Assembly: GCF_003918875.1 (NCBI RefSeq)
Contig: NW_025767479.1
Coordinates: 1,736,001-1,800,000, forward strand
Length of the DNA: 64,000 nucleotides
Reading direction: 5' to 3'
From: Haliotis rubra
Taxonomy: Eukaryota
The notes under the pieces are model-generated. The model ran no database searches. It was not told the origin of the DNA and was given only the letters and a program-made list of their open reading frames with translations. Numbering within the stretch: the first letter of the stretch is position 1; every line of letters starts with the position of its first letter. The position numbers and the translations under genes are program-made. Positions 6,585 through 54,700 of the stretch are shown here, piece after piece.

Positions 6585-9500
6585 GCACAGTGATTAAAGC
6601 GTTCGCTCGTCACGCCGAAGGGACGGGTTCGATTCCCCACATGGGTACAATGTGTGAAGCCCATTTCTGGTGTCCCACGGCGTGATATTGCTGGAATATT
6701 GCTAACAGCGCCCAAAACCATACTCCCTCATTCATTTCAATTTCAGACGTATAACATTTAAACATAATGATTCTCTTTAAAGTTGTGCTGTGCTGTATGA
6801 CGGAACTGAAAATGACTCAATCGATTAATGAATCACGTGCACGTCTCAATTCTCTATATACCAAAACTAAAACTAGATAACGAATATATATACAGACAAA
6901 GCAGTCACAAAATATCCATTGGCCCTACACAATATGATGACGCAGAACATGACGATCACGTTCCTAACACGAGATGCACATCATTAACGACATTCACATA
7001 CCTGCCATGACCGGAAACCCGTCACTAGCACCATTCACGTTACTCACATGATGAGAAACACGTCACTAACGACATTCACACGCACCGCACATGATGAGAA
7101 ACACTTTACTCACGACATTCACATGATGAGAAACACTTTACTCACGACATTCACACGCACCGCACATGATGAGAAACACTTTACTTACGACATTCACACA
7201 CCTCACACAGCAAGATACATTCACGTCACTAACGATATTCACCTACCCTACACAGTGAGAGGCAGTGACGATGTGTCGTTTATCAATGATGGAACCGGCA
7301 CACAATCTTAAGGTAAACCGTTCTTCCAAGTAAACTGTCCAAGGGAACTCCTTTTCTTCGGCATCAATGCCACCCACAACACGAGGCATGGCGTACCGAG
7401 ACGCGTTCCCGGTCTTTGAACTTAGGCCACACGGGGGATCTTGAAAAATAAATAAGTTCTTGCGTGATCACATGTCATGTTTTGTACAGAATATCTATGT
7501 TCTTGTCCCAGTCGGTATCTTAACAACAAAGGTCTTAATGATATTTATATTAATAAAATGTTGGGATCGTGGACAGAGTACCCCTTTTCACAGCCTACCA
7601 AATGAAGACAGAGCTCCGTTCTAGGGGTCAGTCTACCCTGTTGATTTCAAACATTTTTAAAGAGCACCAACAGTTCTTCATCGTACATTGGGATATTCAA
7701 CTAGTTCTAGAAGCTTAAAGTATGGAGCATATCCCTACTACAAGCATTTAAACCTGCTGAACAACGGGGGTGTTTTGAACCGCAAGGATGATTTTTGTTT
7801 GGGAGGAACTGGCGGTATCTGATGCTCATGTATGATGCTCTTACAGAAGTAGTTCATATGCATGCTAAATCATTTTGAATCATTTACATCAACCATGCAG
7901 ATCGGTGTGATCGTTGTTGTTGCACAACTGGCCGTTATCACAATAGGATCGTATAGTACTGACTGACTGACTGACTGAGTTTGGTTTTACGCCGCTTTTA
8001 GCAATATTCCAGCTACATCACGGCGGGGGAACACCAGAAGGATCGTATAGTAAATGTCCCGGAAGGTATGCGTTCGACGTGCTCAAAGGAATACCGCAGG
8101 GAGGTAGATGGGCAATGTTACCCATTGGGGAGATCGAAACATTATGCACTTGGATTTTGAAGACATTTAGTTAAAGGTTATTCTTTCCGGTAAAACTGAA
8201 TTGNNNNNNNNNNNNNNNNNNNNNNNNNNNNNNNNNNNNNNNNNNNNNNNNNNNNNNNNNNNNNNNNNNNNNNNNNNNNNNNNNNNNNNNNNNNNNNNNN
8301 NNNNNNNNNNNNNNNNNNNNNNNNNNNNNNNNNTGGACAACATTTGATGGGATTGCTTAACCAAGTCGTAAAGATAATCAGATGAAATGTTACCCGTTTC
8401 ACGTTTGATGGGATCCTGTGTACACTGGTAATAGTAGAACAGGTAAACACACACCGGGGACATGGTAAAGCAGCTCTGGAAATGGTTACACATAAGAGCT
8501 CGTTCCTGGGCAGCTGGAAGGAAGAATCACTTTGAAATTAAAATTTGACATCAAATGCATAGAAGATGAATTGCGTTTCTTTAATGCTGAACAGATGAAC
8601 TATTGAAACGTTACCATCTTAAAAATAATAAAAAACACGTTCAAACTAAGTCAATGCAAAACACATCGCCCAAACACAACAATAGCTACGTCAAATAATT
8701 TTCGCAGAAAATATACTCTCCCAAAAAAGAAACGCATATAGGAAATTCAACTGTATTTTTATGTTTATTTTGAAACATCTTGTAGGCTTTATGAGTCAAT
8801 GAAATATAGCGAAATTACACACTGGGAATGCAGACGTATCCGTCTTTGGCACTAACTCGAGGAAAGTCAGTTTGAGTGTCACATGGAGACGTGTGGTGGC
8901 GCTGAAGTCAATCCCTCGTGTGACCACCGTGGACATCCAGAACTGCACGGCATCGCCTCGGCATCGAACGAATAAGTCTCAGAATCTCGTGTTGCCCAAT
9001 CGCAGCCCACTCTGCCTGTAGTGCCTGTGCGAGTTGCTGAAGTGTCTGGGGCTGAGGGTTACGGCGTTGCACCCGTCTGTCCGGGGCATCCCACAGATGT
9101 TCGATTGGGTTTAAGTCCGGTGATCTTGAGGGCCAGGGGAGCACATTGATGTTGTGGTTCTGGAGGAAGTCTCTGGTGTGACGTGCTGTGTGGGGCCTGG
9201 CATTGTCCTGTTGAAACAACTCCCTCTGGCGATCAATGATTGGAAGGAGGTGTGGGTGTAGGATTTCGTCACAGTACCGTTGAGCTGTCAGGTTGCCCTG
9301 GATCATCACCAAATCACTTCTCCTACGGCAGGTGATCGCTCCCCACATCATAACACTGTCCAGGCCGAATCTGTCCACCTGGGGAACGCAAGCGTCGGCG
9401 AAACGTTCACGTCGACGTCTGTACATCCGCATTCTTCCATCGCGTCGTTCCAATAGAAATCGCGATTCAACACTGAACCAGATTCTACGCCAATTCGGTA

Positions 9501-12500
9501 GGTTCCAGGCCTGAACGTTGGTGCACCATTGAACTCGATGTCGACGATGTTGTTGTCGAAGCACAGGGCCAAAATAAGGTCTTCTGGCAAGTAAACCAGC
9601 CTCCCTCAACCTGTTTCTGACGGTCTGTGCAGAAAGCCTCCTCAATCCGGGTATTTGTCGAGCGGTACTGGTCGCCGTAGCTGTTCGATGACGCAGGTGA
9701 TGTACCCGGATGTAGCGATCCTGTGCCGCAGTGGTCGCTCGAGGTCGCCCACTACGAGGGACATCTGCTACCGCATTGTGCCGGCGATATCTCTCCCAGA
9801 GCCGTGAAATGGTGCTTTGGTGAACATTCATGCGTGGGGCAACTGCACGTTGAGACTGGCCAGCTTCAAGCAAACCAATGGCGATATGACAGTTGGCTTC
9901 ACTTAGACGTGGCATTTTGCGTTCGTCAACAATATTCCAAATACAGTGAATAATCGACAGACAGCGATCAACCTTTTATACCCATCATTGAGACTATCTG
10001 ATCCCCAACTTTCACGTGCATTGCATGTGAATTGTGTATTCTGTGACCCTACACGCCGAAATTGAAAATCATGCTGTTAAATACGGGTATTTTACGGATG
10101 GTGCGTTTTGTTGTGATGTTTCAAAACATAAACACCATAGGACTCATAAACAGAGCAAAACCTTTTGTAAAATGAATCACGTTTTAATTCATTGCTACAT
10201 AAAATTGCTATTTTCATGATGCGTTTCTTTTTGGGAGAGTATATAAAAAGTGAAACACGAGCCGATTGGGAAGCCAAAACAACACGTGTAATCAGGATAT
10301 ATATTTGATGCAAACAGCAAGTGAAACACTCGCAGTCAGAGATATAACGCAACTGAAATTGATCGCTTGACACCCGAACCACGCAAACGGATCCTGGGTA
10401 TGATACAGATTGGAGCCACCAATGCTGTTCTTATTTGGCTGCTCAATTGTTGCTGTAACTAACCTAATGCAACGTTTCGGACAGACCGGACAGAAATCAG
10501 ACAGGTCAAGAACAGGCAAATCCGGGTAACTACGCCCAATGAAGACCGGTTCCTGCGTCTCGGAATCGATTCCTGGTAGTGATGTCATCCACAAAGGTAT
10601 ATGGTTTGCTGACATGCAGCGGTCATTCGATTACACGTGTTGTTTCGGCTTCCCAATTGGCTAACAGATATTACAGAGGACAGTTATTGACAGCGCAGCA
10701 GAGATTTAAATGAACCTGCACTGTTTGTCGTTGGCACCGACGTGACTGACAGAGGGTCGTCTTTACCGATTTGTCCGTTAAGAGCCGATGAAAGTAAAAA
10801 CTGTTTACGGCCGAAAGGGGGAACCAAAGACGGTATCAGTGTGTAGGGCCGTATGGCGGAACGGAAGTTCTGGTGTGGGGAGGGATGTGTGGGCAAGAGA
10901 GGGAACAGTACTGGAAGGCGTTCCCGAAATTTGACAATGCAGCGATAAATGTATGGCATAAAAATTTATTGTCCAGTTGCCTTGCCATTTCTACAACAGC
11001 TGCCAACATCATAACAACGCCAGGCCCCATACATCCCGGACTTTGCAGAACTTCCCTGAAGCCAACAACGTCCAAGTGTTCCACGCTCCCGAGACCTTTC
11101 CCCCACAGACAACATCTGGGATGTCATGGCTCGTCATGTTTAACAGCAGCCACATCCTAGAGCCAGCCAACAAGAGTGAGTGAGTTGGGTTTTACGCCGC
11201 TTTTAGCAATATTCCAGCAATATCACGGCGGGGGGACACCAGAAATGGGCTTCACACATTGTACCCATGTGGGGAATCGAACCCGGGCTATTTCGTGACG
11301 GTCGAACGCTTTAACCACTAACCTACCCCACCGCCCCTCTACAACATGAATACATGTGATTGTTATGTCACACAATCTTAATTTACTCGTGCTCTCTGTA
11401 AACCCAGCCTTCTGAGAACAATGGCGACGTATCTTACATGACGTCCACAGACAAATGGGTTTCGGCGCGTCTAGTAGCAGGGGATGACGAGAAAAGGGAA
11501 ACCAAAACTTATCAATATGACGTCTCATTGAACTTGAGCGATTTTAGATTTTTGCTTTTGCTATCCTCACCTCAAGTAGGCAACCGTCATGCCAGTATTG
11601 GCTGCTGTATGACGGTCATTTTCTATATATATTTCCATGAAATTTTGATCAATTCAATACATTTTATTTCAGGCATCTATCTTTTGTGGTTTTTACTAAG
11701 ATTAATATAACCCTATAGTAAAGTTTCTTTTAGCCGTCAGTATACATTACAATGTAGGTCAATAACCTTTAGCTGCTACGAGGTAACCTGGTGTACAAAG
11801 CAACCGTTTGTCTAGTCGTTTGTCAGGCTGCAAACCTCCACATGAATACATCAGGTGTGCTCATTTCTAGAGATGTTAGGTGTCAAGACTTTTTAATTAT
11901 CTATTTGAATTAATTTTGAGAGCGTACATACGAACTTTACGGAAGAAAACTCCATACTTTATAGTAAGCAACCTTTTCAATCAAGTTACACCATAAAGTC
12001 ATTTCAGAAATTGCATCTGAACACTGGGAGGGTTTTATTAAATACATGTACGACACATTGTTTGTCAACTTGAACTCATGCTATCCAATTTGTAACATTG
12101 CAGGAACTTACTGACATGAACCTATTGTGAACGTCTAGTGGTACCAGTGGAGGATGGAAAACGTACCCTTTTCATGAATACATGTTGTCATCACTAATTT
12201 GCAGTGATAAATTTATATAATTCTCATCAATACTTCATCTTTTAGTTCGGCAAATATTCAAGACAAGATAGCGTCAACTCAAACTGTCACGAATCGTGTC
12301 ATTAAAATCTGTGAACATACTGCGGAACTGTCTCTGTTCTTTTTCAGAATGCTATCGACGAATGTGATAATTAGACACTACAATGTTACAGTAATTATAA
12401 TGTATAAGGTTGGTAATATGGATTCACGCGTTCCTTTTGGTTCCAGACTGATGGTTTGATAAACCTATATGTTTTAGTCCAAACTACATACTAATATAAA

Positions 12501-14050: not shown

Positions 14051-14102
14051 ACAGAATATAGAGGTCCTCATTCCCCATTAAAATTGTTGAATTAAGTGGA
14101 TT

Positions 14103-20000: not shown

Positions 20001-22302
20001 TAATTTTAGAGAGTCAGGTTAAACTAGACAGTATACAATAAGCGATGCAGTGATCGTAGTTAGAGAGGAATGCACATGTGTCACAAGGTCAAACTTTCAC
20101 AATCAGATTCACTTTGAGTGATTATTTTACGTCGATGTACTCATGTTGATAATTAGCCACCCCGATGCTAAGACATATGTGTCTAGGCGATGACAGTAAT
20201 TACAACCATTGACATACATATAACACTCTTCGAAACGACATATACTCAACTTACATACTGTAGATACACCCGAAGATCCGGGTTAGAATTGATCTTCAGT
20301 AACCCATGCTTGTAAGAGGCGACTTACAGGATCGAGTCTTCAGGCTCGCTGACTTGGTTACCACACGTCATCATATCCCAATTGCGTAGATCGATGCTCA
20401 TGCTGTTGATCACTGGACTCTATTGTCCACACTCGATTATTTACAGACCGCCGCCATGTAGCTGGAATATTGCTGAGAGCGGCGTTAAACAACAAACAAC
20501 GTACCTGACGCAGTGTGCTGCTGTAAGTATGGAGTTCTTGCTGATAATCGACGCTCCGCAAAGATATTTACTACGTCCTTCTTTCAAAAGATGAACAGTC
20601 CAGGGAAACTCCCCGTCCAAAGCGTCTATACCACCAACTATCTTGACCGTTGGGTATCGAGATGCATTGCCTGTGACCGAACTGAATCCACACGAAGGGG
20701 TTGGGTCTGGAAATAGGAAAATACATATGTGAAGGTAGGGTACTCCGTCAACATTAATTCCCCTTCTGCCCAGACTTTTCTACAATGGTAACGATCTAAA
20801 TGAAGTCTGTATTTCCTCAGATTCTGAATCTCCCATCAAACTAGCGCTCCTTTTCAGTTTAAAGGCGTTATTTGTTTCTATTAAAATAAATATCTTGTTA
20901 TTTCAGCATTCCATAAATGAATGAATGAGCTGGTTTTAACGTCACTTCAACATTACAAATTCTACTATTGAGTTTGCACTGACAAGATAGTCCCACAGAT
21001 TTACCCGACTCGCCATTCATATCTTCCCACGTACCACTGTTCTAAGACGGCCCTTTAAGGTGCGAATGTTCAGGATTCGTGATTGGTTGCAATCAGATTT
21101 AGTTGTACAAACAGCGACGTTGTTTCAAAGGTGATCATTCGCAAAGCCTCGGTGATTTCCGTATGTTTCGGGAGAACTAGAACCTCTTCACCTGCGCGAT
21201 GCGCCAAAGTTTCGTCTAGACAGAACTCAGTCATGTAATGGCGGATCGCTCTCGTTGACTACCGACAAGCTTGCCATTAAATGTTTTGTGTGTCACATTA
21301 ACAAAAACATTTTGTCGATTAATTCCTGCACTCTCTATTGCTAGTTTCTGATTTTCAGTTTATCATGAAATACCGAATCTGTCCTTCGCATGTTGGTCAA
21401 CTTACTCCATGGCGGCCGCCATATTGGATGTAAGTCGATGTAACACGTGTTCTGGTTGGATAGAAAGAAGGGAGATAATTCATGTTGATTTTACGAGAAC
21501 CGGGAAATATGGCCGCATTAAAACAGAGGTGACCTCTGTGGGAAGAGAATGCTGAATCACCTGTGAGCTACCCAATGTGACAGTTTGTCATAAACGTTTG
21601 AAGATGACTACATTTTAATACATATTGATCAAGTCCTACCTGTGCATCGATAGTAAAACAACAGCAGAAAGCAGAGAGGGGAAATGTTGGAACAATTCCG
21701 GAAGTGAAGACACAAGCTGGCCCGTACGTCTTCAGTGGCTAGCAATATATAAACATATATCAACAGTTAATGAAAACTCATGGACGCACGCGAATATGAT
21801 TAAATGGACTATTTATGAGCACCTCATCTATTTCTTACAAGCACACCCTTCATGTACTTGCCAACGATAAAATAAAACATTATTTAAAACTTTTAGTGTG
21901 TGAGAGTGTACAGTTGTAGCAATATTCAGCCGGGGGACACAAGGAATTATCTTCACACAAATGACCCATGCGGTAATCGAACTCGTTGTATTGTTGTTCA
22001 CGCTATCAACCACTGGTTTACCACCTACTTTGAGCATGACCCTTGTGATTGGATACAGTGCTATAATATTACCCATCATCATTATCATCATCATCATGAT
22101 GTCGAGACTCGGATATTTACAGATCCGCGTTTAAAAACTGTATTATTGCCCACAGAGGAGAAAGAAAATCTTTAAACATTTTAATATTGTGTTTATCAAC
22201 CTAAATAATGTACATTGTGAATTCAAATCACTCACCTGTAAACGTGGAGATACACACAAGCGTCAAGACACACCCTGTTATATCATATCTACCAAATGCC
22301 AT
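17044..22302 (-). CDS. SP2: secreted trypsin-like serine protease (S1A) with 4-Cys N-terminal module; 7 exons, intact
   Basis: Exons: 22236-22302 [22 protein letters not shown]; 21640-21738 Cys module; 20505-20706 PSCG..PTVK|IVGG..TAAHC; 19633-19751; 18905-19051 DNDVAVV..GWG; 18008-18165 ..KDACG; 17044-17202 [22 protein letters not shown]. Open frame throughout. Confidence 0.93.
17253..17826 (+). mobile_element. Internally deleted non-autonomous Tc1 element in the last intron of SP2
   Basis: TIRs tatacacaaagaactta(g/a)ttaag at both ends in TA context; inside, frameshifted transposase C-terminus [18 protein letters not shown]. Confidence 0.85.
18599..18758 (-). mobile_element. SINE family A
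   Basis: Reverse complement of the consensus. Confidence 0.9.
20269..20499 (+). mobile_element. SINE-like family B
   Basis: Matches consensus; ends next to an SP2 splice donor. Confidence 0.85.
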
Positions 22303-27400: not shown

Positions 27401-30363
27401 GTTGGCAATGAAGTGTGCACCCCCCCCCCCCCCCTTTCTCAATAGTGTGCACCTCCCTTTCTCAAAAAGCTGTATCCGCCCCTGGTGACTAAAGTGATAT
27501 GCTTCAACGCTACCTAACTTTACGCTCCAATTTTAGCATTGAATCACCCGTGTACATCCTTTCACTGATAAATTAATAAATTACAGAACGGCCATGGGTG
27601 ACGTCATCTGTCTAATGTTTAGTACTCGTGTCTGGAGTAACCTTCCGCTAAGTCAGTTCTTTCTTTTGAACTGGAAAGACGAGATGGTAATGCAATGCAA
27701 TAAGGTAAAAGAACGTTTCTTAAACACTCTAAAACCGTGAAATATCGACACAAACGTAAGTGAATTTGACTAAAGCTAAACCAAATCAGTAAATTGCTAT
27801 CANNNNNNNNNNNNNNNNNNNNNNNNNNNNNNNNNNNNNNNNNNNNNNNNNNNNNNNNNNNNNNNNNNNNNNNNNNNNNNNNNNNNNNNNNNNNNNNNNN
27901 NNNNNNNNNNNNNNNNNNNNNNNNNNNNNNNNNNNNNNNNNNNNNNNNNNNNNNNNNNNNNNNNNNNNNNNNNNNNNNNNNNNNNNNNNNNNNNNNNNNN
28001 NNNNNNNNNNNNNNNNNNNNNNNNNNNNNNNNNNNNNNNNNNNNNNNNNNNNNNNNNNNNNNNNNNNNNNNNNNNNNNNNNNNNNNNNNNNNNNNNNNNN
28101 NNNNNNNNNNNNNNNNNNNNNNNNNNNNNNNNNNNNNNNNNNNNNNNNNNNNNNNNNNNNNNNNNNNNNNNNNNNNNNNNNNNNNNNNNNNNNNNNNNNN
28201 NNNNNNNNNNNNNNNNNNNNNNNNNNNNNNNNNNNNNNNNNNNNNNNNNNNNNNNNNNNCATCGTATCTTATAGTCAATCCTGTGAAGTTAAATATTTTA
28301 ATTCGGTGGGTTTGCTTGGTATGTTTTTTCTTAATCCTAAGTAGAGGCATCACCTGACACAATGGGCGGCCGTGAGGATCACATCTTTCCTTATAATGGA
28401 GCCTCCACACATGCTGATAACGGCCTGTTCATCTACGACGTTCACTGTCCATGGGAACTCCCTCTCCTCCGCGTCGACACCACCGACAACACGTGGCATG
28501 GCGTATAGGGATGCTCTTCCTGTCACGCGGCTCTCCCCGCATGCCGGTCCTGAATAAAACCAGACATATGACCTAAAACAATGTCAACATAATGTAGCTA
28601 ACTTATCCCTTTGAATATTTATGCGTTGTTGAAGGACAATGCTTTTATGGTAAAGGTTTCCGCTTTTTGTGTATGTAGTGCTCATTGTTTCTAAAGGTAG
28701 TGCATGGAAAGTTGTACGTTTGATATAATAGTCATAAAATTAACTATTTATCACGTGCTAATATATTCTTTCAGTAGGGTGAATATGATTACAGTGATTT
28801 ACAGTCTGTTTGCAGTGAACACGTACCGATGAATTTCACTTTAAACTAAAAAGTAAATAAAATAAAGTAAAATTAAGATTGCGAATCCTCATAATTTTAC
28901 CTTGCCAATTGGACATTTAAATCTGAGAATTTTATTTCACTTAGGATAAAAGTTGTTTAACAAACGATCATAGTTTTAAATCGCTATTATTAGTTTGAAT
29001 TACCAGGGGATATGCAAATTAAATGAAACACCGAAAACAAGGAGGGTTGGTCTAAATTAACGCTCATCACGTACTGCACGTGCATTTGTTTCACTGTTCA
29101 ATCTACTGCACTTACCCCCTTGTAATACAAACCAATAATAGCGATTTGAATCTATGATCATTTGTTAAGAAACTTTTATCCTAAGTTAAATAAAATTCTG
29201 AGATTTAAATGTCCAATTGGCAAGGTAAAATTATGAGGATTCGCAATCTTAACTTCACTTTATTTGATTTACTTTTTAGTTTAAAGTGAAATTCATCGGT
29301 ACGTTTTCACTGCAAACAGACTAATACATTTTCTACACACATCAAATTGAGGACATGAAGTTTGAATAAACATTTTCATGATAATTATACGAATTGTAGT
29401 AGCGAGTGAGTATGGTTTTATGCCTCCTTTAGCAATATTCCAGCAATATCACGGCGGGGGACACCAGAAATAGCCTCACACAGTGTACCCATGTGGGGGA
29501 ATCGAACCCGGGTCTTTGGCATGACGAGCGAACGCTTTAACCACTAGGCTACCCAACCGCTCGGCAAAACAATTGTAACTATATGTGCGAACATTTGATT
29601 AGCGACATGCTATGGAACCTATTGTGTCTGTAACTAGAGAAATAGACACAAGAAAAAAAAACATGTTGGGGTAAATCATGAAGTTATACATATCTTATCC
29701 GTCAACACCTGAAACTAACGGTAATTGATGTAACTAATGTGGTTAATATGCTTAAATACATTACCAGTATTTCTCTGAATGTTGAAATCAGTACAGTTGT
29801 AGTATCCAAACAATACAGGGCAGAGTAGAGAGGAGGCGAAACAGTTCAGTAAAGAATTACAGAAAGCTGCTCTGTCTTGGGCGGCTGAAATATATGAAAG
29901 ACCATTAAACCACTTTTCACAGTGTCATTACTTCAGTCAAATGTGCTTCACACAATGGATGGGTATATTAACCCGGGTCTAGACATGATCCCGGGAATAG
30001 TGCATTGTCGTTTTGGCTTTTTTAAATAAGAGAAAAAAGACTCCATTGTTGTTAGGGCAAATCACATCCATTGTAATCACACGCACGCACGCACACAAAA
30101 ACGCTCCCGCGCACTCACATACACGCACAAACACGCACGCACACACAAACACGCAAACTCANNNNNNNNNNNNNNNNNNNNNNNNNNNNNNNNNNNNNNN
30201 NNNNNNNNNNNNNNNNNNNNNNNNNNNNNNNNNNNNNNNNNNNNNNNNNNNNNNNNNNNNNNNNNNNNNNNNNNNNNNNNNNNNNNNNNNNNNNNNNNNN
30301 NNNNNNTAAGAAGCTCACAATGGTAACACGTAAAAACACGCCTCTTCTTATACTCAAAGTCAT
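24454..30363 (-). CDS. SP3: secreted trypsin-like serine protease (S1A) with 4-Cys N-terminal module; 7 exons; +1 frameshift in Asp exon; first exon runs into a gap
   Basis: Exons: <=30307-30363 [19 protein letters not shown](gap); 29765-29884 Cys module; 28354-28549 PACG..AMPR|VVGG..TAAHC; 26767-26885; 25717-25864 DNDIAVV (148 bp vs 147 in SP1/SP2); 24987-25147 ..IDACS; 24454-24609 [21 protein letters not shown]. Confidence 0.88.
27317..27484. mobile_element. Short GC-rich non-autonomous DNA element (hAT-like CAGGGGCGGAT termini)
   Basis: cataggcggatgcag ... ctgtatccgcccctg imperfect TIRs; no TSD recognisable. Confidence 0.5.
28802..29323. mobile_element. MITE with about 205-bp TIRs (CAGT terminus, Tc1/mariner-like) in an SP3 intron
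   Basis: 28803-29010 is an inverted repeat of about 29116-29322; preceded by TA; no coding capacity. Confidence 0.85.
29403..29560 (-). mobile_element. SINE family A
   Basis: Reverse complement of the consensus. Confidence 0.9.
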
Positions 30364-31918: not shown

Positions 31919-34900
31919 ATGCTTCTGTCCTTTTGCATCTTAACAGGTAAGAAATACTTGATGATGGTGATTTGGAAACATATATAATGCGTATTTCGCT
32001 CACGGGACACAGTAGTAGTAAACTGCTTATTAAAGTGTCACATGCACAACATTTACAGTAAAATACAATTCACATATAACAATTTAAAGGAAGTGCGTCC
32101 AGCCATACATGGGCTTACGAGACACTATAAATACATTATAACTAGATTAATGGTATACACATAATGATATATAATATGGGAGATAGATATTTAGGCAGAT
32201 CGTAGATAAGACACGCTAATAACAACAACAGACTCCTCGATGAAACAACAAATTCTTATAGTAATCATAATTTTAGTACACATACATCAGACATAATTGC
32301 AATAGATAGAATATAAAAAGAAATAACTACAAAAAAGAAATTATGTCTTTAAAAAAGACACATGCTAAAGACATTTTTATAGTTGACACTTCCATTAAAT
32401 TTAATTCTTTAATTTACCGCTCAATTTTGACTCAATAGATATCTGTGTGTTCACATGCTTCCTTTGATCTTAATTGTACTTTGATTAAAAACACAACCGA
32501 TTAGCCTTTAAGACCTACCCTGTGTATGTTGACCCAGGTACAACATACAAAAGCCATGGAGTGAGAATCAGACAGGATCATCCTGTGAAGCAATGTTGAG
32601 GGGCCAACTATCTTGAATAATGCGATTCCTTCTTGTCATCAGTCTATTGTTCTGTTCATGTAATTGTTTTCCTGCACAAAGAATTGAAGGTATGTGAATG
32701 TTATAATGCATTAATTATCTTCCAATATGTAATTGCATGTGACAGAGCTACAGAATGAAAATATGCCACAATATTTATGTAATTTTCAGCATAAACTGCT
32801 TTGCCTTGTGTTGTTCCTTCCAACAAATATTTACATTGATAGTTAATTGTTCCGCTTGGGTATGATATAAAGTGTATTGCGAAAAATTAACGATGCACGT
32901 ATTCTACTTGCTAGAGGGTAATGAGTTTGATTGTACTTTCATGTAATTATCTTTTGGAAAATAGTACTTTTGTCAGTCTTTAATCATAATGTAGCGTAGG
33001 TTTTATGCCGATTGCTAAGTAAGTAAAGTTTGAAAAAAACACCTGCATCTTTAATTACTTTACTGTCTGTTAACTAAAATTACTAACAATAAATAAACAA
33101 CATCAGTTGCAATGGACATAATACTATTTAAGTGAAACGTTTATGTAGGGAAAATATTATGCCTAAACTATCTTTAGGATAAAGAAATTTTCTTTGCGTC
33201 AACAATCAAGGATCTAATTTATTAATTATTTTATGAAGAGTTGTGCAGGATCCTGACCAATCTCCGTCATGATGCGCATTCCCAACAACTGTCTGACATT
33301 CTTGACTGTGATAAAATGTGTAAGTACATTCATACCATCATCACAGTACTTTTATTCAAACTGGATGTTGTTTTAAAGTGATGAAAGATGATATTTCAAA
33401 ATTGACAATGCTTTAGACAGGAAATATTAATGAGAATTAGTTAACATACTAATTCAGTCATATTGTTATGTCATGTATATTTTATACATCTATCATATTT
33501 CTTCATAATTGTTTTTGAACATACACGAGTGTATGGTGATATATGAAAAATATTTTTGTACCTTTGTACCATTTCGTCGAAATATAACATCAATAGATCA
33601 GGTACCTTCTGGTCCGTTGTATTTCGAACTTACAACATGCAGTGCACTTCATTTAAACTATGTAATAAATTTAAACATATATTGTTTTCCAGTATCGTCA
33701 TGTGGTACAGTGCAGAACAGAAAGTGTCCTCAACCATGGATAGTTCTAGTTCGTGACAAGAAAAGGAATGCTGATATGTGTGTTGGAACGTTAATAGACG
33801 AGAGACATGTCATCACTGCTGCCCATTGCTTCAATCAAAGGTACGAACCTCACACAACATTTTAACTTCTGATCGGGGGTGGGGGTGGGGGGAGTGGGGG
33901 TGGACTTACATAATTGGCAGGCGGTCCTAACAACCCATCAAATGACATCTGCTGGGTAGAGGACGGCCGCTTGTCTTTAATGTATGGTCACCCTTTAATG
34001 TATGTTTTNNNNNNNNNNNNNNNNNNNNNNNNNNNNNNNNNNNNNNNNNNNNNNNNNNNNNNNNNNNNNNNNNNNNNNNNNNNNNNNNNNNNNNNNNNNN
34101 NNNNNNNNNNNNNNNNNNNNNNNNNNNNNNNNNNNNNNNNNNNNNNNNNNNNNNNNNNNNNNNNNNNNNNNNNNNNNNNNNNNNNNNNNNNNNNNNNNNN
34201 NNNNNNNNNNNNNNNNNNNNNNNNNNNNNNNAATGATGGCGAATTCAGTTTCTTATATTTTCCACGCACGCTGAAGTGTATTTGTTATTGGAGCGGTATA
34301 TGTATATGATGGAATGTGAATTTACGAGTTTTCATGCATTTTACCAGCCCTTCCAAATTCACAACTCCTTAAAGATTTTCAATGTCATTTTACATTTACT
34401 AAAAAGTAATTCTCCATGAGAAAATCAAGCTGCTTACTTAACAGGAGATAGAAAAACCTCAAAAATATAATTTCTGTCAAATCCGATTGGCAAAATACAG
34501 TCATGTTATAAGCAATGCATGTCTACATAATTATAAAACATTATGCTTGACGCTTCACTTTTTACTTTTCACCAGTAGAGAACAGATGGTTTCCACAATG
34601 TATATTTTATGGAATATGTTTATAAAACAAGATGCAGATTCCTGATTGTCGTTGTAAGGTACTACCTCCCTGATGATGTCCATGTCGGTATGGGTTCACA
34701 AGCGAATGGACAGCTTACCTACATAGACTTGAAATCCTTCACGCGTCACCCGAAATTCAGGAGCACTGGTTTACCAAGTAAGTTCTCACAGTACCTTTTC
34801 TATAATCACACTAAATCGTTCCTAAAAGCGGAGTCGATTACACAATTCTTTTATCTTAAAAGTATATGTTCACGAATCACTATCAAACAGTATAAATATC

Positions 34901-41695: not shown

Positions 41696-44600
41696 ATGTG
41701 GACGAAATCTGCACTTTTACTTCTTATGCTATGTGCCACATTCCTGAAAACCGACTGTGCCAGTAAGTACTTGACCATTTTTAAATTGTATAAATGGCAT
41801 ATGCTGTTGCTATATTGATTATTTTTTAATGACATATTACAGCTGCCTTGTGAAGAAAGCTTTATTTCATATTTCTTTGCATCGTCATAATGCTGTGTCA
41901 TCATCTCAAGCTTAGGTGCAGAAGAGTCATGTCATCTTTATTTCTGATCTATAACCACATAATATTTAATAAACTTCTTTGTTCGGTATAGCCAACATAC
42001 ATGTTGAAGGAAAAGCATTATATACACAGGAGTACAATGTTTCTGCTCGAAATAGTATTTTATAAATAGGTGGCAAAGACATGTATTGTCAATATTTGAC
42101 CACAATAAGGAAATAGATTAATTGAATATATTTCACTTATTAAGTGATAATAGGATAAATAGTATTGGTGCATGAATGAACCGCTATTGCTTATTCTTGA
42201 TGTAAGTGGTATCTCAAATGTGGATGAATGCATTCTGTTAAGAGGTACAGTAACAGCTACATTCAAATTTCATTGTTACATAAAAACAACAAACAATTTT
42301 GCTTTTGGTGTATCTATAATCAGTCGAAATATTCGTTTTATAGCATTGTAGTCAACGTGCACGTCGAAAGATTTCAGCTGTTATTAAATGTTTCAGGATT
42401 TTAAGAAGAACATAAATATATATTCAGTTGTAATAACACATTGCTTTGTTTTTCATATAGTTCTGCTTTTTCAATTGTGGATATTTTCATAAGCAGAATG
42501 AATACTCAAAACAATCAGCTTTGTCAGAGAAAACAACATATTTCGCAAAAAGAGAAGAATTATCACCTTAACGGTAATTACATTTTAATACTAAGAAAAA
42601 CATTACCTCAGTGAAACAGAGTATAACATATCGTCGTCATATACCTATCCTTTCCCGTGTGCATGATGCATGTGATTGAAAGTCATGCATGACACCATGT
42701 TCATTGAAGTATCTTCATTACAAATGCATGGATTGCAAACGACATCATGAATTCTGTCGGATATAAGAAACGCTTTCACAAGTAAAATTGCTTTTCTCAG
42801 ACACTTATACACAGTAAATGATCGCTGGCATGATATAGATATGGAGGTTTTTGTGATATCAATGTTCACCGATATGTGATTCCTGCACTGTATGGTTTTA
42901 TTCCATAATATTACAGACCTATGTGACTTCTGTGATGTTTTTAAGCAGTGCGTAAGGTTCCCTGCCTGCAAACACTACTGGGACATATGCAAATGTGAAG
43001 GTATTTGAAGCTTTAAGTGCTAATATTACGCAAACACAATGCTGTTTCATAGCGCATGTCATATTCATTAATAAAGCTGCTTAAATTCAAAGCCTACAAT
43101 ATGTTCGCATGATTCATTCCTAGCCTCATATTGTATTTGTTTCGTGTAATTTGGAACTATAAAAATCTTTGTTCAGTTGTAATAATGATAAAGAAGTATA
43201 TGAAATGGTTTACATTACATTTAACAACCTATTACAAAGCATATTTTAATTTTAAGAAATGAATGTAAAAAAATATTGAATGTATCATGAAGTTACTTTT
43301 TGAACATTTCTAAGCTATTCCCCCAGACATCCAATGTGGCGTTGCTGAATCTCCCCCGATACCTCGGATATCCACCTACATCGTTGGTGGAAAGGACGTC
43401 GGCGATTGCGAGTTGCCATGGACCGTTGCATTGTTCATCAAGGGTTCCCTGCGTTGTGGCGGCGCCATCTTCGACGACCGGCACATCATCAGTGCAGCTC
43501 ATTGCCTCATGTTAGTGCAGCTACCTTAACTCGAGTGAAAGGGTGAATGAGAGGATATGTATGTTTTCAGGACACAAGTATCATTTGGGAATCAAAACTA
43601 TGCCAACATGGATAATTAAAGACGTGAGCCAAAGCTTAAGTCAGCAAGCTCGCTCACTATTCGTGAAATATAATGTAACAAATTATGATGTTCTACTGTT
43701 TGGTTCACGAGATAACCTCAATGTTGACGTTTTTTGTGAAAATACCTGTAAGAAATTATGATATACGCATGAAATATCAGCTGTTTGAATCACAAAGCTA
43801 CCTCGATGTTACAAATACAATGGACTCTTGAACAGTATAAACTGTTTGAATCCCCAAGCTACCGCGATCTTACAAATATTCTTGAAATGAGCAGTAACGC
43901 ATGAAGTATAAACTGTTTGAATCACAAAGCTACCTCGATCTTACAAATATTCTTGAAATGAGCAGTAACGCATGAAGTATAAACTGTTTGAATCACAAAG
44001 CTACCTCGATCTTACAAATATTCTTGAAATGAGCAGTAACGCATGAAGTATAAACTGTTTGAATCACAAAGCTACCTCGATCTTACAAATATTCTTGAAA
44101 TGAGCAGTAACGCATGAAGTATAAACTGTTTGAATCACAAAGCTACCTCGATCTTACAAATATTCTTGAAATGAGCAGTAACGCATGAAGTATAAACTGT
44201 TTGAATCACAAAGCTACCTCGATCTTACAAATATTCTTGAAATGAGCAGTAACGCATGAAGTATACACAGTTTGAATCACAAAGCTACCTCGATCTTACA
44301 AATATTGTAATGCATGAAGTACAAACAGTGTGAATCACCAAGCCACCTCGATCTTACACCTATTCTTGAAATATGCTGTAACAAATTATGTTAAACGCAT
44401 GAAGTATAAACTGTTTTAATCACCAAACTACCTCGATGTTACAAACCTTCGTGACATATGCTGAAATGCATCATGCTATACACATTATGCTATATAAACT
44501 TTTTTTAATGGGCAGTCAGGAGAACATTTCCTATGATACTGACAGACACATTTATATCGCTTGGTTCAACCAGGCATGTAACAATAATGTAGCAGCAATT

Positions 44601-47600: not shown

Positions 47601-47911
47601 CCATTTCCGGTGTCTCTGCCGTGATATTACTGGAATATTGCTAAAAGTGGCGTAAAACCATACTCACTCATTTGTGCATGGCGATAGTCAAGAAAATGTT
47701 TCCAACCGATCCACAAAAGATACTTCTTTTTCAGACTGATTCCGGAGGTCCTCTGATTTGCGACTATAATGACCGATGGACTCTGATTGGAGTTGTGTCA
47801 AGTGGTGTTGGATGTGCTAGGCCCATGCTTCCTGGAAAATATACAAGGGTGTCAAAATATATCTCTTGGATTAACTATGTAACATCAGTGAGGAAACCAT
47901 ATCACTACTGA
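41696..47911 (+). CDS. SP5: secreted trypsin-like serine protease (S1A) with 6-Cys N-terminal module; 7 exons, intact; Y|IVGG and TDSGG
   Basis: Exons: 41696-41762 [22 protein letters not shown]; 42917-43000 Cys module; 43327-43510 IQCG..ISTY|IVGG..SAAHC; 44761-44870; 45377-45517 VNDIAIL..PICLP..GWG; 47273-47415 ..KDSCN; 47735-47911 [13 protein letters not shown]..; AATAAA at 47938-47943. Confidence 0.92.
43772..44445. repeat. 71-bp tandem repeat in an SP5 intron
   Basis: taaactgtttgaatcacaaagctacctcgatcttacaaatattc.. with period 71, about 9 copies. Confidence 0.93.
45658..46701 (-). mobile_element. 5'-truncated non-LTR retrotransposon (LINE ORF2 C-terminus, RTE-X-like) with 20-bp TSD
   Basis: ORF 45730-46134 [28 protein letters not shown] (CCHC zinc motif); AATAAA plus A-rich tail; TSD atgtcatcgaaatccctatt at 45638-45657 and 46702-46721. 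Confidence 0.85.
46728..46890 (+). mobile_element. SINE family A nested in a family B element, 12-bp TSD
   Basis: TSD cctattgc(t/g)tag at 46716-46727 and 46891-46902. Confidence 0.9.
47514..47671 (+). mobile_element. SINE family A
   Basis: Matches consensus; last intron of SP5. Confidence 0.88.
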
Positions 47912-48012
47912 AGAAACGGACAGTGCTTGAATAATAGAATAAACATTTGCAATACCATTTTTATAAATGTTTATATTGCATTTTTTGTCACTATATGCCT
48001 TAAGCCATACCC

Positions 48013-51729: not shown

Positions 51730-54700
51730 ATGAGTTGGTGTGAGGGGAATAGCGTCTGGAGTCTCTGGTGGCGAATTAGTGTGTTTGCTCTGTGTTTCCT
51801 GACGCTGGTGAGATGCAGCCACGGTCAAAAAAGTAAGTGTGAGCAAGATCTTGTCAAATATTTGACAAGTTTTCTGAAAAATAAATGTGTCAGGTAAGTT
51901 TAAACCACGGTTAACCCTTGAACGGTATAACTTACCTTGCTACATTCATGTTACTAATGTTTCAATAACATCAAACAAGTCAGTTGCATACTAATCTAAA
52001 GAAATTACTATGGAACGCATGATATTAATTACAGTAATATTAACGAATTAGATCCTTAGATTCTTTGGAGCAGTTTGATATTGCTGGATCGTGTGGTTAA
52101 TCAGTGGAAAACATGTGAGAATGTATCATGATTGATTGTTTGTTGTTTTACGCCGCACTCAGCAATATTCCAGCTATATGGCGGTCGTCTGTAAATAATC
52201 GAGTCTGGACCAGACAATCCAGTGATCAACATCATGAACATCAATCTACGCAATTGGGATACGCTGACATATGCCAATCAAGTCAGCGAGCCTGACCACC
52301 CGATCCCGTTAGGCGCCTCTTACGACAATCATGCAGAAGATCATTTCTAACCCGGATCTTCACGGGTCGTAAATGTACAGTATCAATTAATTTAATTGAT
52401 AATAGAGCAGATAGTTTACATAATGTAGCGCGTGTCTTTACTTAATATGACTTGTGGCTTTACATAATGTAACGCGTGTGTTTACTTAATATGACTTGTG
52501 GCTTTACATAATGTGACACGTGTCTTTACTTAATATGACTTGTGACTTTACATAATGTAACGCGTGTCTTTACCTAATATGACTTGTGGCTTTACATAAT
52601 GTGACACGTGTCTTTACTTAATATGACTTGTGGCTTTACATAATGTGACGCATGTCTTTACTTAATATGATCTGTGGCTTTACATAATGTGACGCATGTC
52701 TTTACCTAACATAACACGTATCGTTACTCAATATAATTCAATATCCTTACTGAATATGTCTATATTTAATATGACGTGGTGCCGTTTGCTTTTCCACATT
52801 ATGACCTGTACGTAGAGTTTTCACACGGTACTTGCTGGACTATGTGATGTGTAAGGGCCAGTTGATACAGATAGAGCAGAACAGGCATAACCTTTTCGAG
52901 AGCACCTGCTGACATCACCATGTTTCAGTGACTCACTAGTAAAATTTATATCGTATTATTTGACTAAACATTGTCATTTAGAAAGTGGTCAAATATAACA
53001 TATGTTAAGTTTTGTAATACCAGTGGAAGCTGCATTGGCTGAGTGGGTTAGACGGCTGACTGTGTGTGCTGGAGATTAGGTGCCTGAGTCTGCAGGCGTG
53101 GGTTCGAATCCCGGATGGGACCCAGCCAAACAAAAGTACCAAAACCTGCACTTTACTGAGAAAGTGTAATCCCACATATAGCATGTTTTACGTTGCATCA
53201 CTTGTTTCAATTTTACCTTCTACCTTGTAGATATCAGTGTTCTTTCTTATTTGGCATCTTAAGAAATACCGTTCGTTTAATGGGCATTTAGGCTCAATTG
53301 GTAACCCTATCAAATCAACCTCAAACAACGCTTGCCTGGTCTGCCAGCTCAAATCTCACAGAGATATCACGGGATGTATTACACTGTTCAGAGCTTTTCA
53401 TAAATTTGCACCATGCTGTGGGGCCAGATCCCCTGCGATTAATATTATATTTATTTACAAAAGCACATAGATTTCTCAGTAAGATTTGTTTTATGGGGAA
53501 GTTACATCTCTTATTTGTACATTTTCGTGACCCAGACAGATGTGGAGAGCACTGTCCGTACTTCCGCCAGTGTTTCCCTACGTCACAGGTGTGCCGGCTA
53601 CTGTACAGATACTGTCAATGTGGACCTCTACCTGACGGTAAAAACTGAAATTCTACGTATACTTGTATCTGTTTATGACCCGTGAAGATCCGGGTTGGAA
53701 TTGATCTTCTGCAATTGGTCTTCATTAACCCATGCTTGTCGTAAGAGGCGACTAATGGGATCAGGGGTCAGGCTCGATGACTTGGATGACACATGTCATC
53801 GTATCCCACATGCGAAGATCGATGCTCATGATGTTGATCACTGGATTGTCTGGTCCAGACTCGATTATTTACAGACCGCCGCCATATAGCTGGAATATTG
53901 CTGAGTGCGGAGTAAAACTAAACTCACTCATTCACTGTATCTATTTATAAGTTGCTATGTAGACCTGTTTATCGTTGATGCAAGATGCTTAATGTTTAGT
54001 TATATCCCAAATGAATTTATTGTTATGTCTGATGCCAGTTGAAAAATGGAAACATATATATGATCTCCTTTACGTTAAAGACAGGAGTTTTAATTTACTT
54101 TGTAATTACAGCTGCAATTATTTTCACATAAGGACAAAGAAATCAAATTAATTTAAAAAGACCCAAAAGAAACAATAACAAAAAGATACGACGTGACATT
54201 AATCTGAAAGGAACACACGACGTGACATAATGCTGAAGTTTCGACTTTTCCTTAAATTAATTTAATGAGACGAATGTTTACTTTGTGTTTTATTAGTCAT
54301 TTGATACCTCGATTAAATACATTTTTCAGAGTATACAAAATAGTTCAACAATTACTACATGTAAGTTTGCATATAAATCATGAAACGTGTACATGAAATT
54401 ATCAATATATGTGTGCACAGAAGGCTCCAAATTAGGAATTATTATGAATTTTTTACGAGATAAATTATGTGCAACAAAATCTCTCTAATCCCGACAGTCG
54501 TCTTCCCAGTGAAATGATCTGTATTAAAAATGTTCGGATGATGAATTTTGTGTTTATGTTGTTGTTACAAACAGTAACATACTAAGCTAGTGATTTCCAG
54601 ATTAACGGGGCTACAGTGAAACTTCAATCAATACTTTGTCTCACAGTTTATTTGTACGTGCACTGAATATTGAAAGAATTTAATTTTTAGCATCTTGCGT

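What the first reader, a model, noticed from the sequence alone, without database searches (positions are those of the whole stretch)
8394..53637. Unrecognised exon-encoded Cys micro-domain on six proteases, in 6-, 4- and 2-Cys versions that imply its disulfide map
Seen, each as one phase-1/1 exon between signal and protease: SP6 RCGEHCPYFRQCFPTSQVCRLLYRYCQC (53536-53637); SP5 [26 protein letters not shown] (42917-43000); SP1 [24 protein letters not shown] (8394-8513); SP2 [24 protein letters not shown] (21640-21738); SP3 [24 protein letters not shown] (29765-29884); SP4 LC-x20-C (33239-33319, tentative). The core is C-x5-C-x5/6-C-x8-C with a conserved F/L and an aromatic tail. Cysteines are lost strictly in pairs: C1 and C5 in SP1-3, then C3 and C4 in SP4. 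Inference: bonds C1-C5, C2-C6 and C3-C4, i.e. a CxxxC/CxC cystine-stabilised-helix-like pairing. The pattern does not fit clip, ShKT, EGF, LDLa, Kazal or kringle as I know them, so it may be a new regulatory or targeting prodomain that stays tethered after activation via the CG interchain Cys.
Basis: partly seen in the sequence, partly recalled or inferred. Interest (0 to 1): 0.87.

Follow-up and report, generated by a model that had tools for sequence, protein, structure and literature searches.

The report
Small cysteine hairpin on abalone proteases
Six neighbouring abalone (Haliotis rubra) serine-protease genes each carry one small exon for a roughly 26-residue cysteine-braced module, predicted to be a two-helix hairpin, that matches no catalogued domain, was found only in abalones and is conserved there; its function and exact disulfide wiring are untested.

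Summary
All five quoted peptides are in the window at the stated places (SP1-3 on the minus strand, SP5-6 on the plus strand). Each is one AG/GT-bounded phase-1/1 exon between a signal-peptide exon and the 'CG...IVGG' exon. SP4 has an exon of the same position, phase and size with two Cys, but no detectable sequence similarity to the others.

The genome is Haliotis rubra. RefSeq models of four Haliotis species include the exon, and SP5 also has annotated isoforms in two species that skip exactly this exon. Against H. rufescens and H. asinina the exon is under purifying selection (dN/dS about 0.2), and all 26 Cys columns are invariant.

No known family matches: Pfam, PDB sequences, Foldseek and VIA-align gave nothing specific. 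A profile search of 1.84 billion representatives returned only three Haliotis proteins.

AlphaFold2 predicts a helix-loop-helix hairpin, both alone (pLDDT 88) and inside the SP5 zymogen. That is not a clip or defensin-like fold.

The 2-6 / 3-4 / 1-5 disulfide map is the most parsimonious reading but was not testable here, because no coordinates are returned. A fully nested 1-6 / 2-5 / 3-4 ladder remains open. The 'loss' direction is unresolved. No RNA reads could be examined.

Verdict: a real, lineage-restricted, unnamed small module of moderate interest.

The parts
53536..53637 (+). SP6 exon 2: 6-Cys micro-domain (C-x3-C-x5-C-x6-C-x6-C-x-C), phase 1/1
   Evidence: AF2 hairpin; H. rufescens orthologue L002:20051-20146
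51730..51832 (+). SP6 exon 1: start codon and signal peptide, donor in phase 1
55019..55202 (+). SP6 exon 3: linker Cys ('DCG'), activation site SSR|IVGG, catalytic His
42917..43000 (+). SP5 exon 2: 6-Cys micro-domain (C-x2-C-x5-C-x5-C-x6-C-x-C), phase 1/1; skipped in annotated isoform X2
   Evidence: isoforms P0003 and P0125
41696..41762 (+). SP5 exon 1: signal peptide (RefSeq starts at an upstream ATG, 41666)
43315..43510 (+). SP5 exon 3 (acceptor as in RefSeq P0003): 'QCG' linker, STY|IVGG, catalytic His
8394..8513 (-). SP1 exon 2: 4-Cys micro-domain (C-x5-C-x6-C-x8-C), phase 1/1
   Evidence: RefSeq P0128
13093..13162 (-). SP1 exon 1: signal peptide
   Evidence: matches the N-terminus of P0128
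7247..7439 (-). SP1 exon 3: 'PPCG' linker, MPR|VVGG, catalytic His
21640..21738 (-). SP2 exon 2: 4-Cys micro-domain, phase 1/1
   Evidence: orthologues L001:25853-25948 and L003:17156-17251
22236..22302 (-). SP2 exon 1: signal peptide
20505..20706 (-). SP2 exon 3: 'SCG' linker, TVK|IVGG, catalytic His
29765..29884 (-). SP3 exon 2: 4-Cys micro-domain, phase 1/1
   Evidence: RefSeq P0001
30307..30363 (-). SP3 exon 1 (signal peptide), visible part; its 3' end runs into the N gap 30162-30306
28354..28549 (-). SP3 exon 3: 'ACG' linker, MPR|VVGG, catalytic His
33239..33319 (+). SP4 exon 2: 2-Cys exon (LC-x20-C), phase 1/1; homologous by position only
   Evidence: orthologues L002:2989-3066 and L003:7939-8016; no profile similarity
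32620..32689 (+). SP4 exon 1: signal peptide; the same start as the annotated H. rufescens gene
33693..33840 (+). SP4 exon 3: 'SSCG' directly followed by the protease core, no IVGG activation site; catalytic His

Best explanation
This is a tandem family of six secreted chymotrypsin-fold serine-protease genes of the abalone Haliotis rubra.

In each gene one symmetrical (phase 1/1) exon has been placed between the signal-peptide exon and the chymotrypsinogen-like 'CG...activation site' exon. It encodes a module of about 24-28 residues that most likely folds as a disulfide-stapled alpha-helical hairpin. Helix 1 carries C(1), C2 and C3. A 5-6-residue loop follows. Helix 2 carries C4, and C(5)-x-C6 follow at its end.

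The module is part of the pro-region. After cleavage at [RKY]|[IV]VGG it should stay attached to the active enzyme through the linker Cys ('CG') bonded to the Cys of 'P[IV]CLP' (chymotrypsin Cys1-Cys122). This step is inferred from homology.

Because the exon is symmetrical it can be skipped without breaking the frame, and annotated SP5 isoforms in two species do exactly that. The module is therefore an optional appendage.

Its most likely role is that of a small rigid handle on the zymogen or enzyme, for docking, targeting or zymogen control. In position and tethering it resembles an arthropod clip domain, but the fold is different. This role is conjecture.

The most parsimonious disulfide wiring is C2-C6 and C3-C4 (nested, present in the 4-Cys forms) plus C1-C5 in the 6-Cys forms. 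This is inferred and was not measured or modelled here.

Shown: the exons, their phases, their conservation, the absence of any known-family match, and the predicted helical hairpin. Inferred: tethering, disulfide map, function.
For: Exons and phases.

Species and annotation: RefSeq proteins of H. rubra, H. rufescens, H. asinina and H. cracherodii contain the module. Isoforms X2 of SP5 in H. rubra (P0125) and H. cracherodii (P0124) lack exactly the 28 residues of exon 2.

Conservation: orthologous exons of all six paralogs in H. rufescens and/or H. asinina keep frame and splice sites. Pooled dN/dS is 0.17 and 0.23, Fisher p = 6e-11 and 1e-4. 26 of 26 Cys columns are invariant against 31 of 123 other columns variable.

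Restricted range: the profile of five peptides against 1.84e9 representatives gave 3 hits at E<=0.001, all Haliotis, each at residues about 25-63 of a protease of about 300 aa. A full-length profile search drops from 471 to 341 bits after the Haliotis proteins.

No known family.

Fold: AF2 of SP6 exon 2 alone gives pLDDT 88.3 with helices 3-12 and 17-25. AF2 of the SP5 zymogen without signal peptide gives the same two helices, 3-13 and 17-25, at pLDDT 63-78. Structural neighbours of the ESM Atlas model of the H. rufescens SP6 module are helical segments.

Tethering: CG and P[IV]CLP are family-wide in alignment A4. Cys parity is even outside the module.

SP4 keeps the protease's extra Cys pair (before PW, and five residues before the CLP Cys) while lacking C1 and C5. 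Those two extra protease Cys are therefore not the partners of C1 and C5.
Against: - I examined no RNA reads. The only runs found were genomic contigs of a related abalone, so exon inclusion and skipping rest on RefSeq models and on selection.
- AF2 is not always reliable for tiny disulfide-rich peptides, and the alignment for the module had only 13 rows from one genus. Confidence for the module falls to 63-78 in the full-length model.
- SP5 is not recovered by a profile of the other paralogs (E about 2), and SP4 shows no similarity at all.
- In this assembly SP1 (exon 7) and SP3 (exon 5) carry frameshifts. Two of the three H. rubra 4-Cys copies may therefore be pseudogenes or assembly errors, although their orthologues are intact.
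- There is no functional evidence of any kind.
Confidence: 0.7

Rival explanations
1. Same module and fold, but the 6-Cys forms are wired as a fully nested ladder (C1-C6, C2-C5, C3-C4), as in other disulfide-braced helical hairpins. On this view the 4-Cys forms re-paired the two orphaned Cys (C2-C6) after C1 and C5 changed.
For: With the AF2 helix limits, residues at equal distance from the loop are C3/C4, C2/C5 and C1/C6. In SP6 these are residues 12/19, 6/26 and 2/28; in SP5 they are 13/19, 7/26 and 4/28. The solved alpha-hairpinins have nested bonds, for example Cys7-Cys29 with Cys11-Cys25 (PMC7191063). The pair-loss argument rests on one event for C1/C5, because SP1-3 form one clade.
Against: C2 and C6 keep identical spacing in 4-Cys and 6-Cys forms and must be bonded to each other in the 4-Cys and 2-Cys forms. 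Keeping that bond and adding or removing one whole bond (C1-C5) needs no re-pairing. A CxC tail that turns back along the Cx2-3C turn is also geometrically possible.
Confidence: 0.35
2. The exon is only an extended, structurally braced activation peptide or spacer. It is kept because unpaired Cys would be harmful, and it has no binding or regulatory role of its own.
For: The module is tiny, restricted to one genus and dispensable in annotated SP5 isoforms. Its conserved non-Cys residues (F in helix 1, aromatic residues in helix 2) look like hairpin core rather than a surface site.
Against: dN/dS of about 0.2 across all six paralogs, and retention of the exon in every paralog since their duplication, argue for more than tolerance. 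SP4 kept the exon even after losing its activation site.
Confidence: 0.2
3. It is a degenerate clip or beta-defensin-like module, like the two modules of the neighbouring gene SP7.
For: It has the same position as a clip domain: N-terminal, upstream of a linker Cys. Language-model feature search lists clip-domain clusters, but at scores of 0.63-0.68, far below the level the tool calls meaningful. SP7, next door, has C-x6/7-C-x3/4-C-x11/14-C-x5-CC modules.
Against: There is no Pfam CLIP match even at E<=10. The module has 24-28 residues against about 37-55 (my knowledge), ends in CxC rather than CC, and is predicted all-helical without a strand.
Confidence: 0.05
4. It is a built-in protease inhibitor of the alpha-hairpinin kind, whose hairpin loop occupies the active site of the same or a sister protease.
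For: Plant alpha-hairpinins are helix-loop-helix peptides with two disulfides, and several are potent trypsin inhibitors that use an Arg in the inter-helix loop (PMC7191063). The abalone enzymes have Asp at the S1 specificity position. The SP5 loop contains an Arg.
Against: The loops of SP1, SP2, SP3 and SP6 have no Arg or Lys. There is no sequence relation to alpha-hairpinins and a different Cys spacing.
Confidence: 0.05

Closest known systems
Clip domain of arthropod clip-domain serine proteases (Pfam PF12032, PF18322)
   Same: A small disulfide-rich module at the N-terminus of a chymotrypsin-fold zymogen, upstream of a linker Cys that should keep it tied to the protease after activation cleavage. 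The genes also occur in tandem families.
   Different: No profile match. About half the size. The Cys pattern ends CxC rather than CC. Predicted all-helical hairpin rather than a mixed alpha/beta fold. Seen only in Haliotis.
Cystine-stabilised alpha-helical hairpins: plant alpha-hairpinins; from my own knowledge also scorpion kappa-KTx toxins and twin-CX9C CHCH domains
   Same: Predicted helix-loop-helix braced by disulfides between the two arms. The nested C2-C6 / C3-C4 pairing of the 4-Cys forms is the pairing these families have (PMC7191063).
   Different: Spacing is C-x5-C...C-x8-C, not CX3C...CX3C or CX9C...CX9C. An optional third bond is present. It is a module inside a protease precursor encoded by its own exon, not a free peptide. 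There is no sequence relation, and fold searches gave only generic helical hairpins.
Chymotrypsinogen activation peptide tethered by Cys1-Cys122
   Same: Exon 3 of every gene begins like mature chymotrypsinogen: 'CG', then 15-18 residues, then the cleavage site before [IV]VGG. The partner Cys in 'P[IV]CLP' is present.
   Different: Here a separate exon adds a folded Cys module in front of that peptide. SP4 has lost the cleavage site altogether.
Beta-defensin-like modules of the neighbouring gene SP7 (earlier finding s1-341737)
   Same: Same gene cluster, same idea: small Cys modules ahead of a protease-like domain, in SP7 followed by a Thr-rich stalk. H. rufescens SP6 also has a Pro/Thr-rich mini-exon after the module.
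   Different: SP7 modules follow C..C..C..C..CC spacing and are about 37 residues long. The SP1-6 module is shorter, ends CxC and is predicted helical.

Membership tests
Chymotrypsin-fold serine peptidase (S1, Pfam PF00089) | Trypsin-domain profile match and fold | tested here: met
   PF00089 is precomputed for P0001-P0006. The AF2 model matches enteropeptidase, plasmin and FXIa catalytic domains at E about 1e-25 and TM 0.85-0.9 by target.
Chymotrypsin-fold serine peptidase (S1, Pfam PF00089) | Catalytic His, Asp and Ser motifs | tested here: met
   TAAHC/SAAHC, D[IVL]A and DSGGP motifs are present in SP1-3, SP5 and SP6. SP4 reads NSGAP and SP5 reads TDSGGP.
Clip domain (PF12032 / PF18322) | Match to the family profile | tested here: not met
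   hmmscan of five exon peptides against Pfam at E<=10 returned 0 families.
Clip domain (PF12032 / PF18322) | About 37-55 residues, six Cys, mixed alpha/beta fold with a central sheet (my knowledge of the family) | tested here: not met
   24-28 residues. 6, 4 or 2 Cys. AF2 gives two helices and no strand. This is a prediction, not a structure.
Clip domain (PF12032 / PF18322) | N-terminal to the protease and disulfide-tethered after activation | not testable with these tools
   The position is met, and the linker Cys and Cys122 equivalent are present. The bond itself cannot be shown from sequence.
Alpha-hairpinin / cystine-stabilised alpha-alpha hairpin | Helix-loop-helix fold | tested here: met
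   AF2 helices 3-12/17-25 (SP6 alone, pLDDT 88) and 3-13/17-25 (SP5 in context). Predicted only.
Alpha-hairpinin / cystine-stabilised alpha-alpha hairpin | CX3C-Xn-CX3C motif (PMC7191063) | tested here: not met
   Spacing is C-x5-C-x5/6-C-x8-C, with C-x2/3-C and C-x-C added in the 6-Cys forms.
Alpha-hairpinin / cystine-stabilised alpha-alpha hairpin | Two nested inter-helix disulfides | not testable with these tools
   No coordinates are returned by structure prediction (one search shows no model files). Inferred only, from the 4-Cys and 2-Cys series.
Cystine-stabilised helix (CSH) motif, CxxxC on a helix bonded to CxC on a strand | CxxxC plus CxC with a helix and a strand | tested here: inconclusive
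   SP6 has CxxxC and CxC. SP5 has CxxC and CxC. C1/C2 lie at the start of helix 1. The CxC follows helix 2 and is not modelled as a strand.
Class 1-1 mobile module exon (Patthy's rule for extracellular modules; my knowledge) | One module, one exon, phase 1 at both ends | tested here: met
   All six exons are phase 1/1 with AG/GT, conserved in two other species. Precise skipping is seen in annotated isoforms.

The most novel reading that the evidence does not exclude
A previously undescribed, abalone-restricted protein module: a cystine-stapled alpha-hairpin encoded by a switchable phase-1/1 cassette exon. On this reading it stays disulfide-tethered to an active serine protease and serves as the mollusc's functional counterpart of the arthropod clip domain, controlling where or when members of a protease cascade act. 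Its natural 6-, 4- and 2-Cys series would show how disulfides are added to or removed from a minimal fold.
Probability: 0.3. Interest if true: 0.6.

Novelty: new variant of a known kind. Interest (0 to 1): 0.45.

Why it matters
- Small disulfide-rich modules in front of serine proteases (clip domains) organise the immune and developmental protease cascades of arthropods. Molluscs are poorly charted in this respect. This cluster shows abalones using at least two unrelated small modules on neighbouring paralogs: a helical hairpin on SP1-6 and defensin-like modules on SP7.
- The module is very short for an independently encoded, apparently foldable unit.
- Its natural 6-, 4- and 2-Cys versions make a compact test bed for how disulfides stabilise a helical hairpin. 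A stable hairpin would also be a possible peptide scaffold.
- The module is absent from domain libraries, so the N-termini of these RefSeq proteins go unannotated. A family profile would fix that.
- The practical weight is modest while no function is known.

Tried and rejected
- RNA evidence: the look-up of sequencing runs returned two runs. Laying them showed contigs colinear across introns at about 96.5% identity. That is genomic DNA of a related abalone, so it gives no splice evidence. It only showed that both differences inside SP6 exon 2 (53549, 53570) are synonymous.
- Known-domain searches all came up empty or generic: Pfam, PDB sequence profile (best E=8.7 to an unrelated chain), Foldseek PDB, AFDB Swiss-Prot and VIA-align wide.
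- Atlas feature hits to clip clusters score 0.63-0.68. The tool says shuffled proteins reach 0.8 a third of the time, so I rejected them as evidence.
- Looking for the module outside Haliotis: word-based searches with the pro-regions of SP1 and SP6 found only Haliotis or nothing.
- The N-terminus of the nearest non-abalone relative seen, an Argonauta 'venom protease-like' protein (P0062), is Cys-rich but gives no significant profile match to the module or to the SP4 exon.
- Polarity of Cys change: the tree supports the SP1-3 clade but leaves SP4, SP5 and SP6 unresolved, and SP4 sits on a very long branch.
- The alternative frame of SP4 exon 2 (MMRIPNN..., which looks like a signal peptide) was rejected.
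- Partners for C1/C5 in the protease domain (the extra Cys before PW and the one five residues before the CLP Cys) were rejected, because SP4 keeps that pair without C1/C5.
- Reading disulfides from the AF2 models was not possible: no coordinate files are exposed.
- I did not submit spliced full-length SP2, SP4 or SP6 proteins of this window to the remote tools, because they have no reference. I used RefSeq orthologues instead.

Full report
**1. What is in the sequence**

A six-frame search finds the five quoted peptides letter for letter. SP6 and SP5 lie on the plus strand and SP1, SP2 and SP3 on the minus strand.

Each exon is preceded by AG, followed by GT, and starts and ends in phase 1.

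Upstream of each I found an exon with a start codon, a hydrophobic signal peptide and a phase-1 donor:
- SP6 51730-51832
- SP5 41696-41762
- SP4 32620-32689
- SP2 22236-22302
- SP1 13093-13162
- SP3 from 30363 downwards, running into the N gap at 30306

Downstream, every gene continues with an exon that begins x-C-G. This is followed 15-18 residues later by [R/K/Y]|[I/V]VGG and the catalytic His. SP4 has 'SSCG' but no IVGG.

The five remaining protease exons were mapped by tblastn and splice-site solving. SP2, SP5 and SP6 give uninterrupted proteins of 312-320 residues.

None of the N gaps touches a micro-domain exon. Three lie in introns and one is intergenic. One hides the end of SP3 exon 1. 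I filled none.

**2. Which organism, and is the exon used**

The profile of the five peptides, searched against 1.84 billion representative proteins, returned only three proteins at E<=0.001. Each match sat at residues about 25-63 of a protease of about 300 residues.

Their names and cluster members identify them:
- The window is Haliotis rubra. P0003 = XP_046550579.1 is SP5, P0001 = XP_046550548.1 is SP3 and P0128 = XP_046550578.1 is SP1.
- Orthologues occur in H. rufescens, H. asinina and H. cracherodii.

RefSeq models of four species therefore include the exon.

SP5 isoform X2 of H. rubra (P0125) and of H. cracherodii (P0124) lack exactly the 28 residues of exon 2. The junction codon is the one expected from joining exon 1 to exon 3. 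The symmetrical exon is thus annotated as a cassette.

I could not check this with reads. The two runs offered were genomic contigs of a related abalone at about 96.5% identity, colinear across introns.

**3. Conservation**

I fetched the H. rufescens and H. asinina loci. Every paralog's exon 2 is present in the other species where the fetched loci cover it. The frame is open and AG/GT are kept.
- Pooled Nei-Gojobori counts give dN/dS 0.17 (rubra-rufescens, Fisher p = 6e-11) and 0.23 (rubra-asinina, p = 1e-4).
- Among orthologues all 26 Cys columns are invariant, while 31 of 123 other columns vary (p = 0.002).

Between paralogs the signal is uneven:
- SP1-3 are close to one another.
- SP6 is found by a profile built without it at E = 1.7e-5.
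- SP5 is not found (E about 2). It aligns to SP6 better than all but 16 of 20000 shuffles of its own residues.
- SP4 has no detectable similarity. It belongs only by position, phase, size (81 nt) and the C-x20-C spacing, which equals the C2...C6 spacing of SP5.

**4. Is it a known domain**

No.
- Pfam at E<=10: nothing.
- Profile against all PDB sequences: nothing, best E 8.7.
- Foldseek of the model against PDB and AFDB Swiss-Prot: nothing.
- VIA-align against 48161 chains: only generic helical hairpins from HEAT/TPR-like proteins, Z<=2.6.
- Atlas language-model features list clip-domain clusters at 0.63-0.68, which the tool itself rates as uninformative.

After the Haliotis proteins, a full-length profile search falls from 471 to 341 bits. 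The nearest non-abalone relative inspected, an Argonauta protease (P0062), has a different Cys-rich N-terminus.

**5. Predicted fold**

AlphaFold2 on SP6 exon 2 with a 13-row alignment gives mean pLDDT 88.3 and two helices, residues 3-12 and 17-25.

A separate run used the SP5 zymogen without its signal peptide and a 60-row alignment. It gives the same two helices (3-13, 17-25) at pLDDT 63-78, a disordered stretch just before the activation site, and a confident protease domain. That domain matches enteropeptidase, plasmin and factor XIa catalytic domains. The N-terminal 30-50 residues are left unmatched.

The structural neighbours of the ESM Atlas model of the H. rufescens SP6 module are also helical.

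The module is therefore best described as a disulfide-stapled helix-loop-helix:
- C1, C2 and C3 lie on or at helix 1.
- C4 is at the start of helix 2.
- C5-x-C6 come just after helix 2.

This is not the fold of a clip or defensin-like module. The neighbouring gene SP7 does carry modules with defensin-like C...CC spacing (earlier finding s1-341737).

**6. The disulfide map**

Outside the module each intact protein has an even number of Cys with canonical partners. These are the linker Cys, the usual chymotrypsin pairs and, in SP4-6, one extra pair: a Cys before the PW motif and a Cys five residues before the CLP Cys. SP4 keeps that extra pair while lacking C1 and C5, so C1/C5 do not bond to it.

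In the 4-Cys forms a hairpin allows only the nested C2-C6 / C3-C4 pairing. This is also the pairing of solved alpha-hairpinins (PMC7191063). SP4's two Cys then correspond to C2-C6.

For the 6-Cys forms there are two possibilities:
It is a parallel Cx2-3C / CxC arrangement that needs the tail to fold back along helix 1.
- Equal distances from the loop favour a fully nested ladder, 1-6 / 2-5 / 3-4.

SP1-3 are one clade (88/98 support), the position of SP4 is unresolved, and the direction (loss or gain of pairs) is unknown.

The tools expose no coordinates, so the modelled connectivity could not be read.

**7. How it most likely works**

Shown: the module is a secreted N-terminal part of the zymogen. 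It is encoded by an optional class 1-1 exon, conserved under selection, and placed directly before a chymotrypsinogen-like activation peptide.

Inferred from the chymotrypsinogen Cys1-Cys122 precedent and the presence of both Cys: after cleavage the module stays tied to the enzyme.

The enzymes have Asp at the S1 specificity position. Four of them have Arg or Lys at their own activation site, so mutual or auto-activation is possible. SP5 has Tyr there, like the Argonauta relative.

Conjecture: the rigid hairpin is a docking or regulatory handle. In position it is analogous to a clip domain.

An inhibitor role like that of trypsin-inhibiting alpha-hairpinins is unlikely, because four of the five loops lack Arg or Lys.

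**8. Caveats on the genes themselves**

In this assembly SP1 exon 7 changes frame inside a run of G, and SP3 exon 5 changes frame between '...NEAL' and 'PLSV...'.
- RefSeq reads SP1 through to an aberrant C-terminus (P0128).
- RefSeq skips SP3 exon 5 (P0001).
- The orthologues are intact.

These may be assembly errors or recent pseudogenes. They do not affect exon 2.

**9. Verdict**

It is a new variant of a known kind, namely a small disulfide module on a protease zymogen. It was detected only in abalones and is of moderate interest.

Noticed in passing
window 2977-3130 (-): SP1 exon 7 changes reading frame inside a G-run just after [10 protein letters not shown]. The RefSeq protein P0128 follows the shifted frame to an aberrant C-terminus, while orthologues in three species are intact.
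   Followed up: partly
window 25715-25860 (-): SP3 exon 5 changes frame between '...VILNEAL' and '[14 protein letters not shown]', not at a homopolymer. The RefSeq model P0001 skips the whole exon (273 aa), while H. rufescens and H. asinina orthologues are intact (322 and 324 aa).
   Followed up: partly
window 30307-30363 (-) and gap 30162-30306: The signal-peptide exon of SP3 runs straight into the N gap, so its last codons and donor are not visible in the window.
   Followed up: yes
L002:20435-20488 (H. rufescens): SP6 of H. rufescens has an extra Pro/Thr-rich mini-exon between the micro-domain exon and the CG exon. No counterpart was found in the H. rubra window. SP7 and another H. rubra protease family (finding s1-327981) are also noted with Thr-rich stalks.
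   Followed up: partly
P0123 (H. rufescens, 646 aa); L002:10001-24382: The RefSeq model fuses SP5 and SP6 into one 'transmembrane protease serine 9-like' protein. It reads from the SP5 C-terminus into the SP6 signal peptide, so it is probably a read-through annotation artefact.
   Followed up: no
L001:28124-28210 (-) (H. rufescens): A degenerate copy of the SP2 micro-domain exon lies on the opposite strand inside an SP2 intron (E about 1e-3 to the profile).
   Followed up: no
window 47735-47755 (+); P0003, P0122, P0123: SP5 reads N-T-D-S-G-G-P. The Gly before the Asp-Ser of the active site (the oxyanion-hole Gly193 of chymotrypsin) is Thr, conserved in three species. Its activation site has Tyr at P1, as in an Argonauta relative.
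   Followed up: no
window 33693-33840 and 38757-38903 (+): SP4 has no IVGG activation site after its 'SSCG' and reads NSGAP at the active-site Ser motif. It sits on a very long branch in the tree, which agrees with earlier finding s1-341762.
   Followed up: partly
SP4, SP5, SP6 exons 3 and 5 (e.g. window 55100-55110 and 55880-55900); P0062: There is an extra Cys pair in the protease domain: a Cys just before the PW motif and a Cys five residues before the CLP Cys. It is present in SP4-6 and in an Argonauta protease and absent in SP1-3.
   Followed up: partly
window 9753-9915 (-): An open frame resembling the DNA-binding N-terminus of a Tc1/mariner-type transposase lies inside the 4.6-kb first intron of SP1 (resemblance from memory, not searched).
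   Followed up: no
window 3563-3649, 6603-6665, 11244-11267, 18666-18728, 38536-38559, 46763-46822, 47543-47605, 58945-58995: A dispersed repeat whose translation reads '..[20 protein letters not shown]..' recurs in introns and spacers of the cluster on both strands.
   Followed up: no
window 57394-58290 (+): A tandem repeat downstream of SP6 has a translation that repeats 'FSWHRTWNDIGSLFIKQ...'.
   Followed up: no
window 36396-36506 and 36793-36903: A perfect inverted duplicate of about 110 bases lies inside the long SP4 intron.
   Followed up: no
window 51650-57500 (runs X1, X2): Two public runs hold this locus as genomic contigs at about 96.5% identity, from a related abalone or a divergent haplotype. 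Several intronic stretches (52042-52433, 53610-54001) have very high word depth, so they are high-copy repeats.
   Followed up: partly
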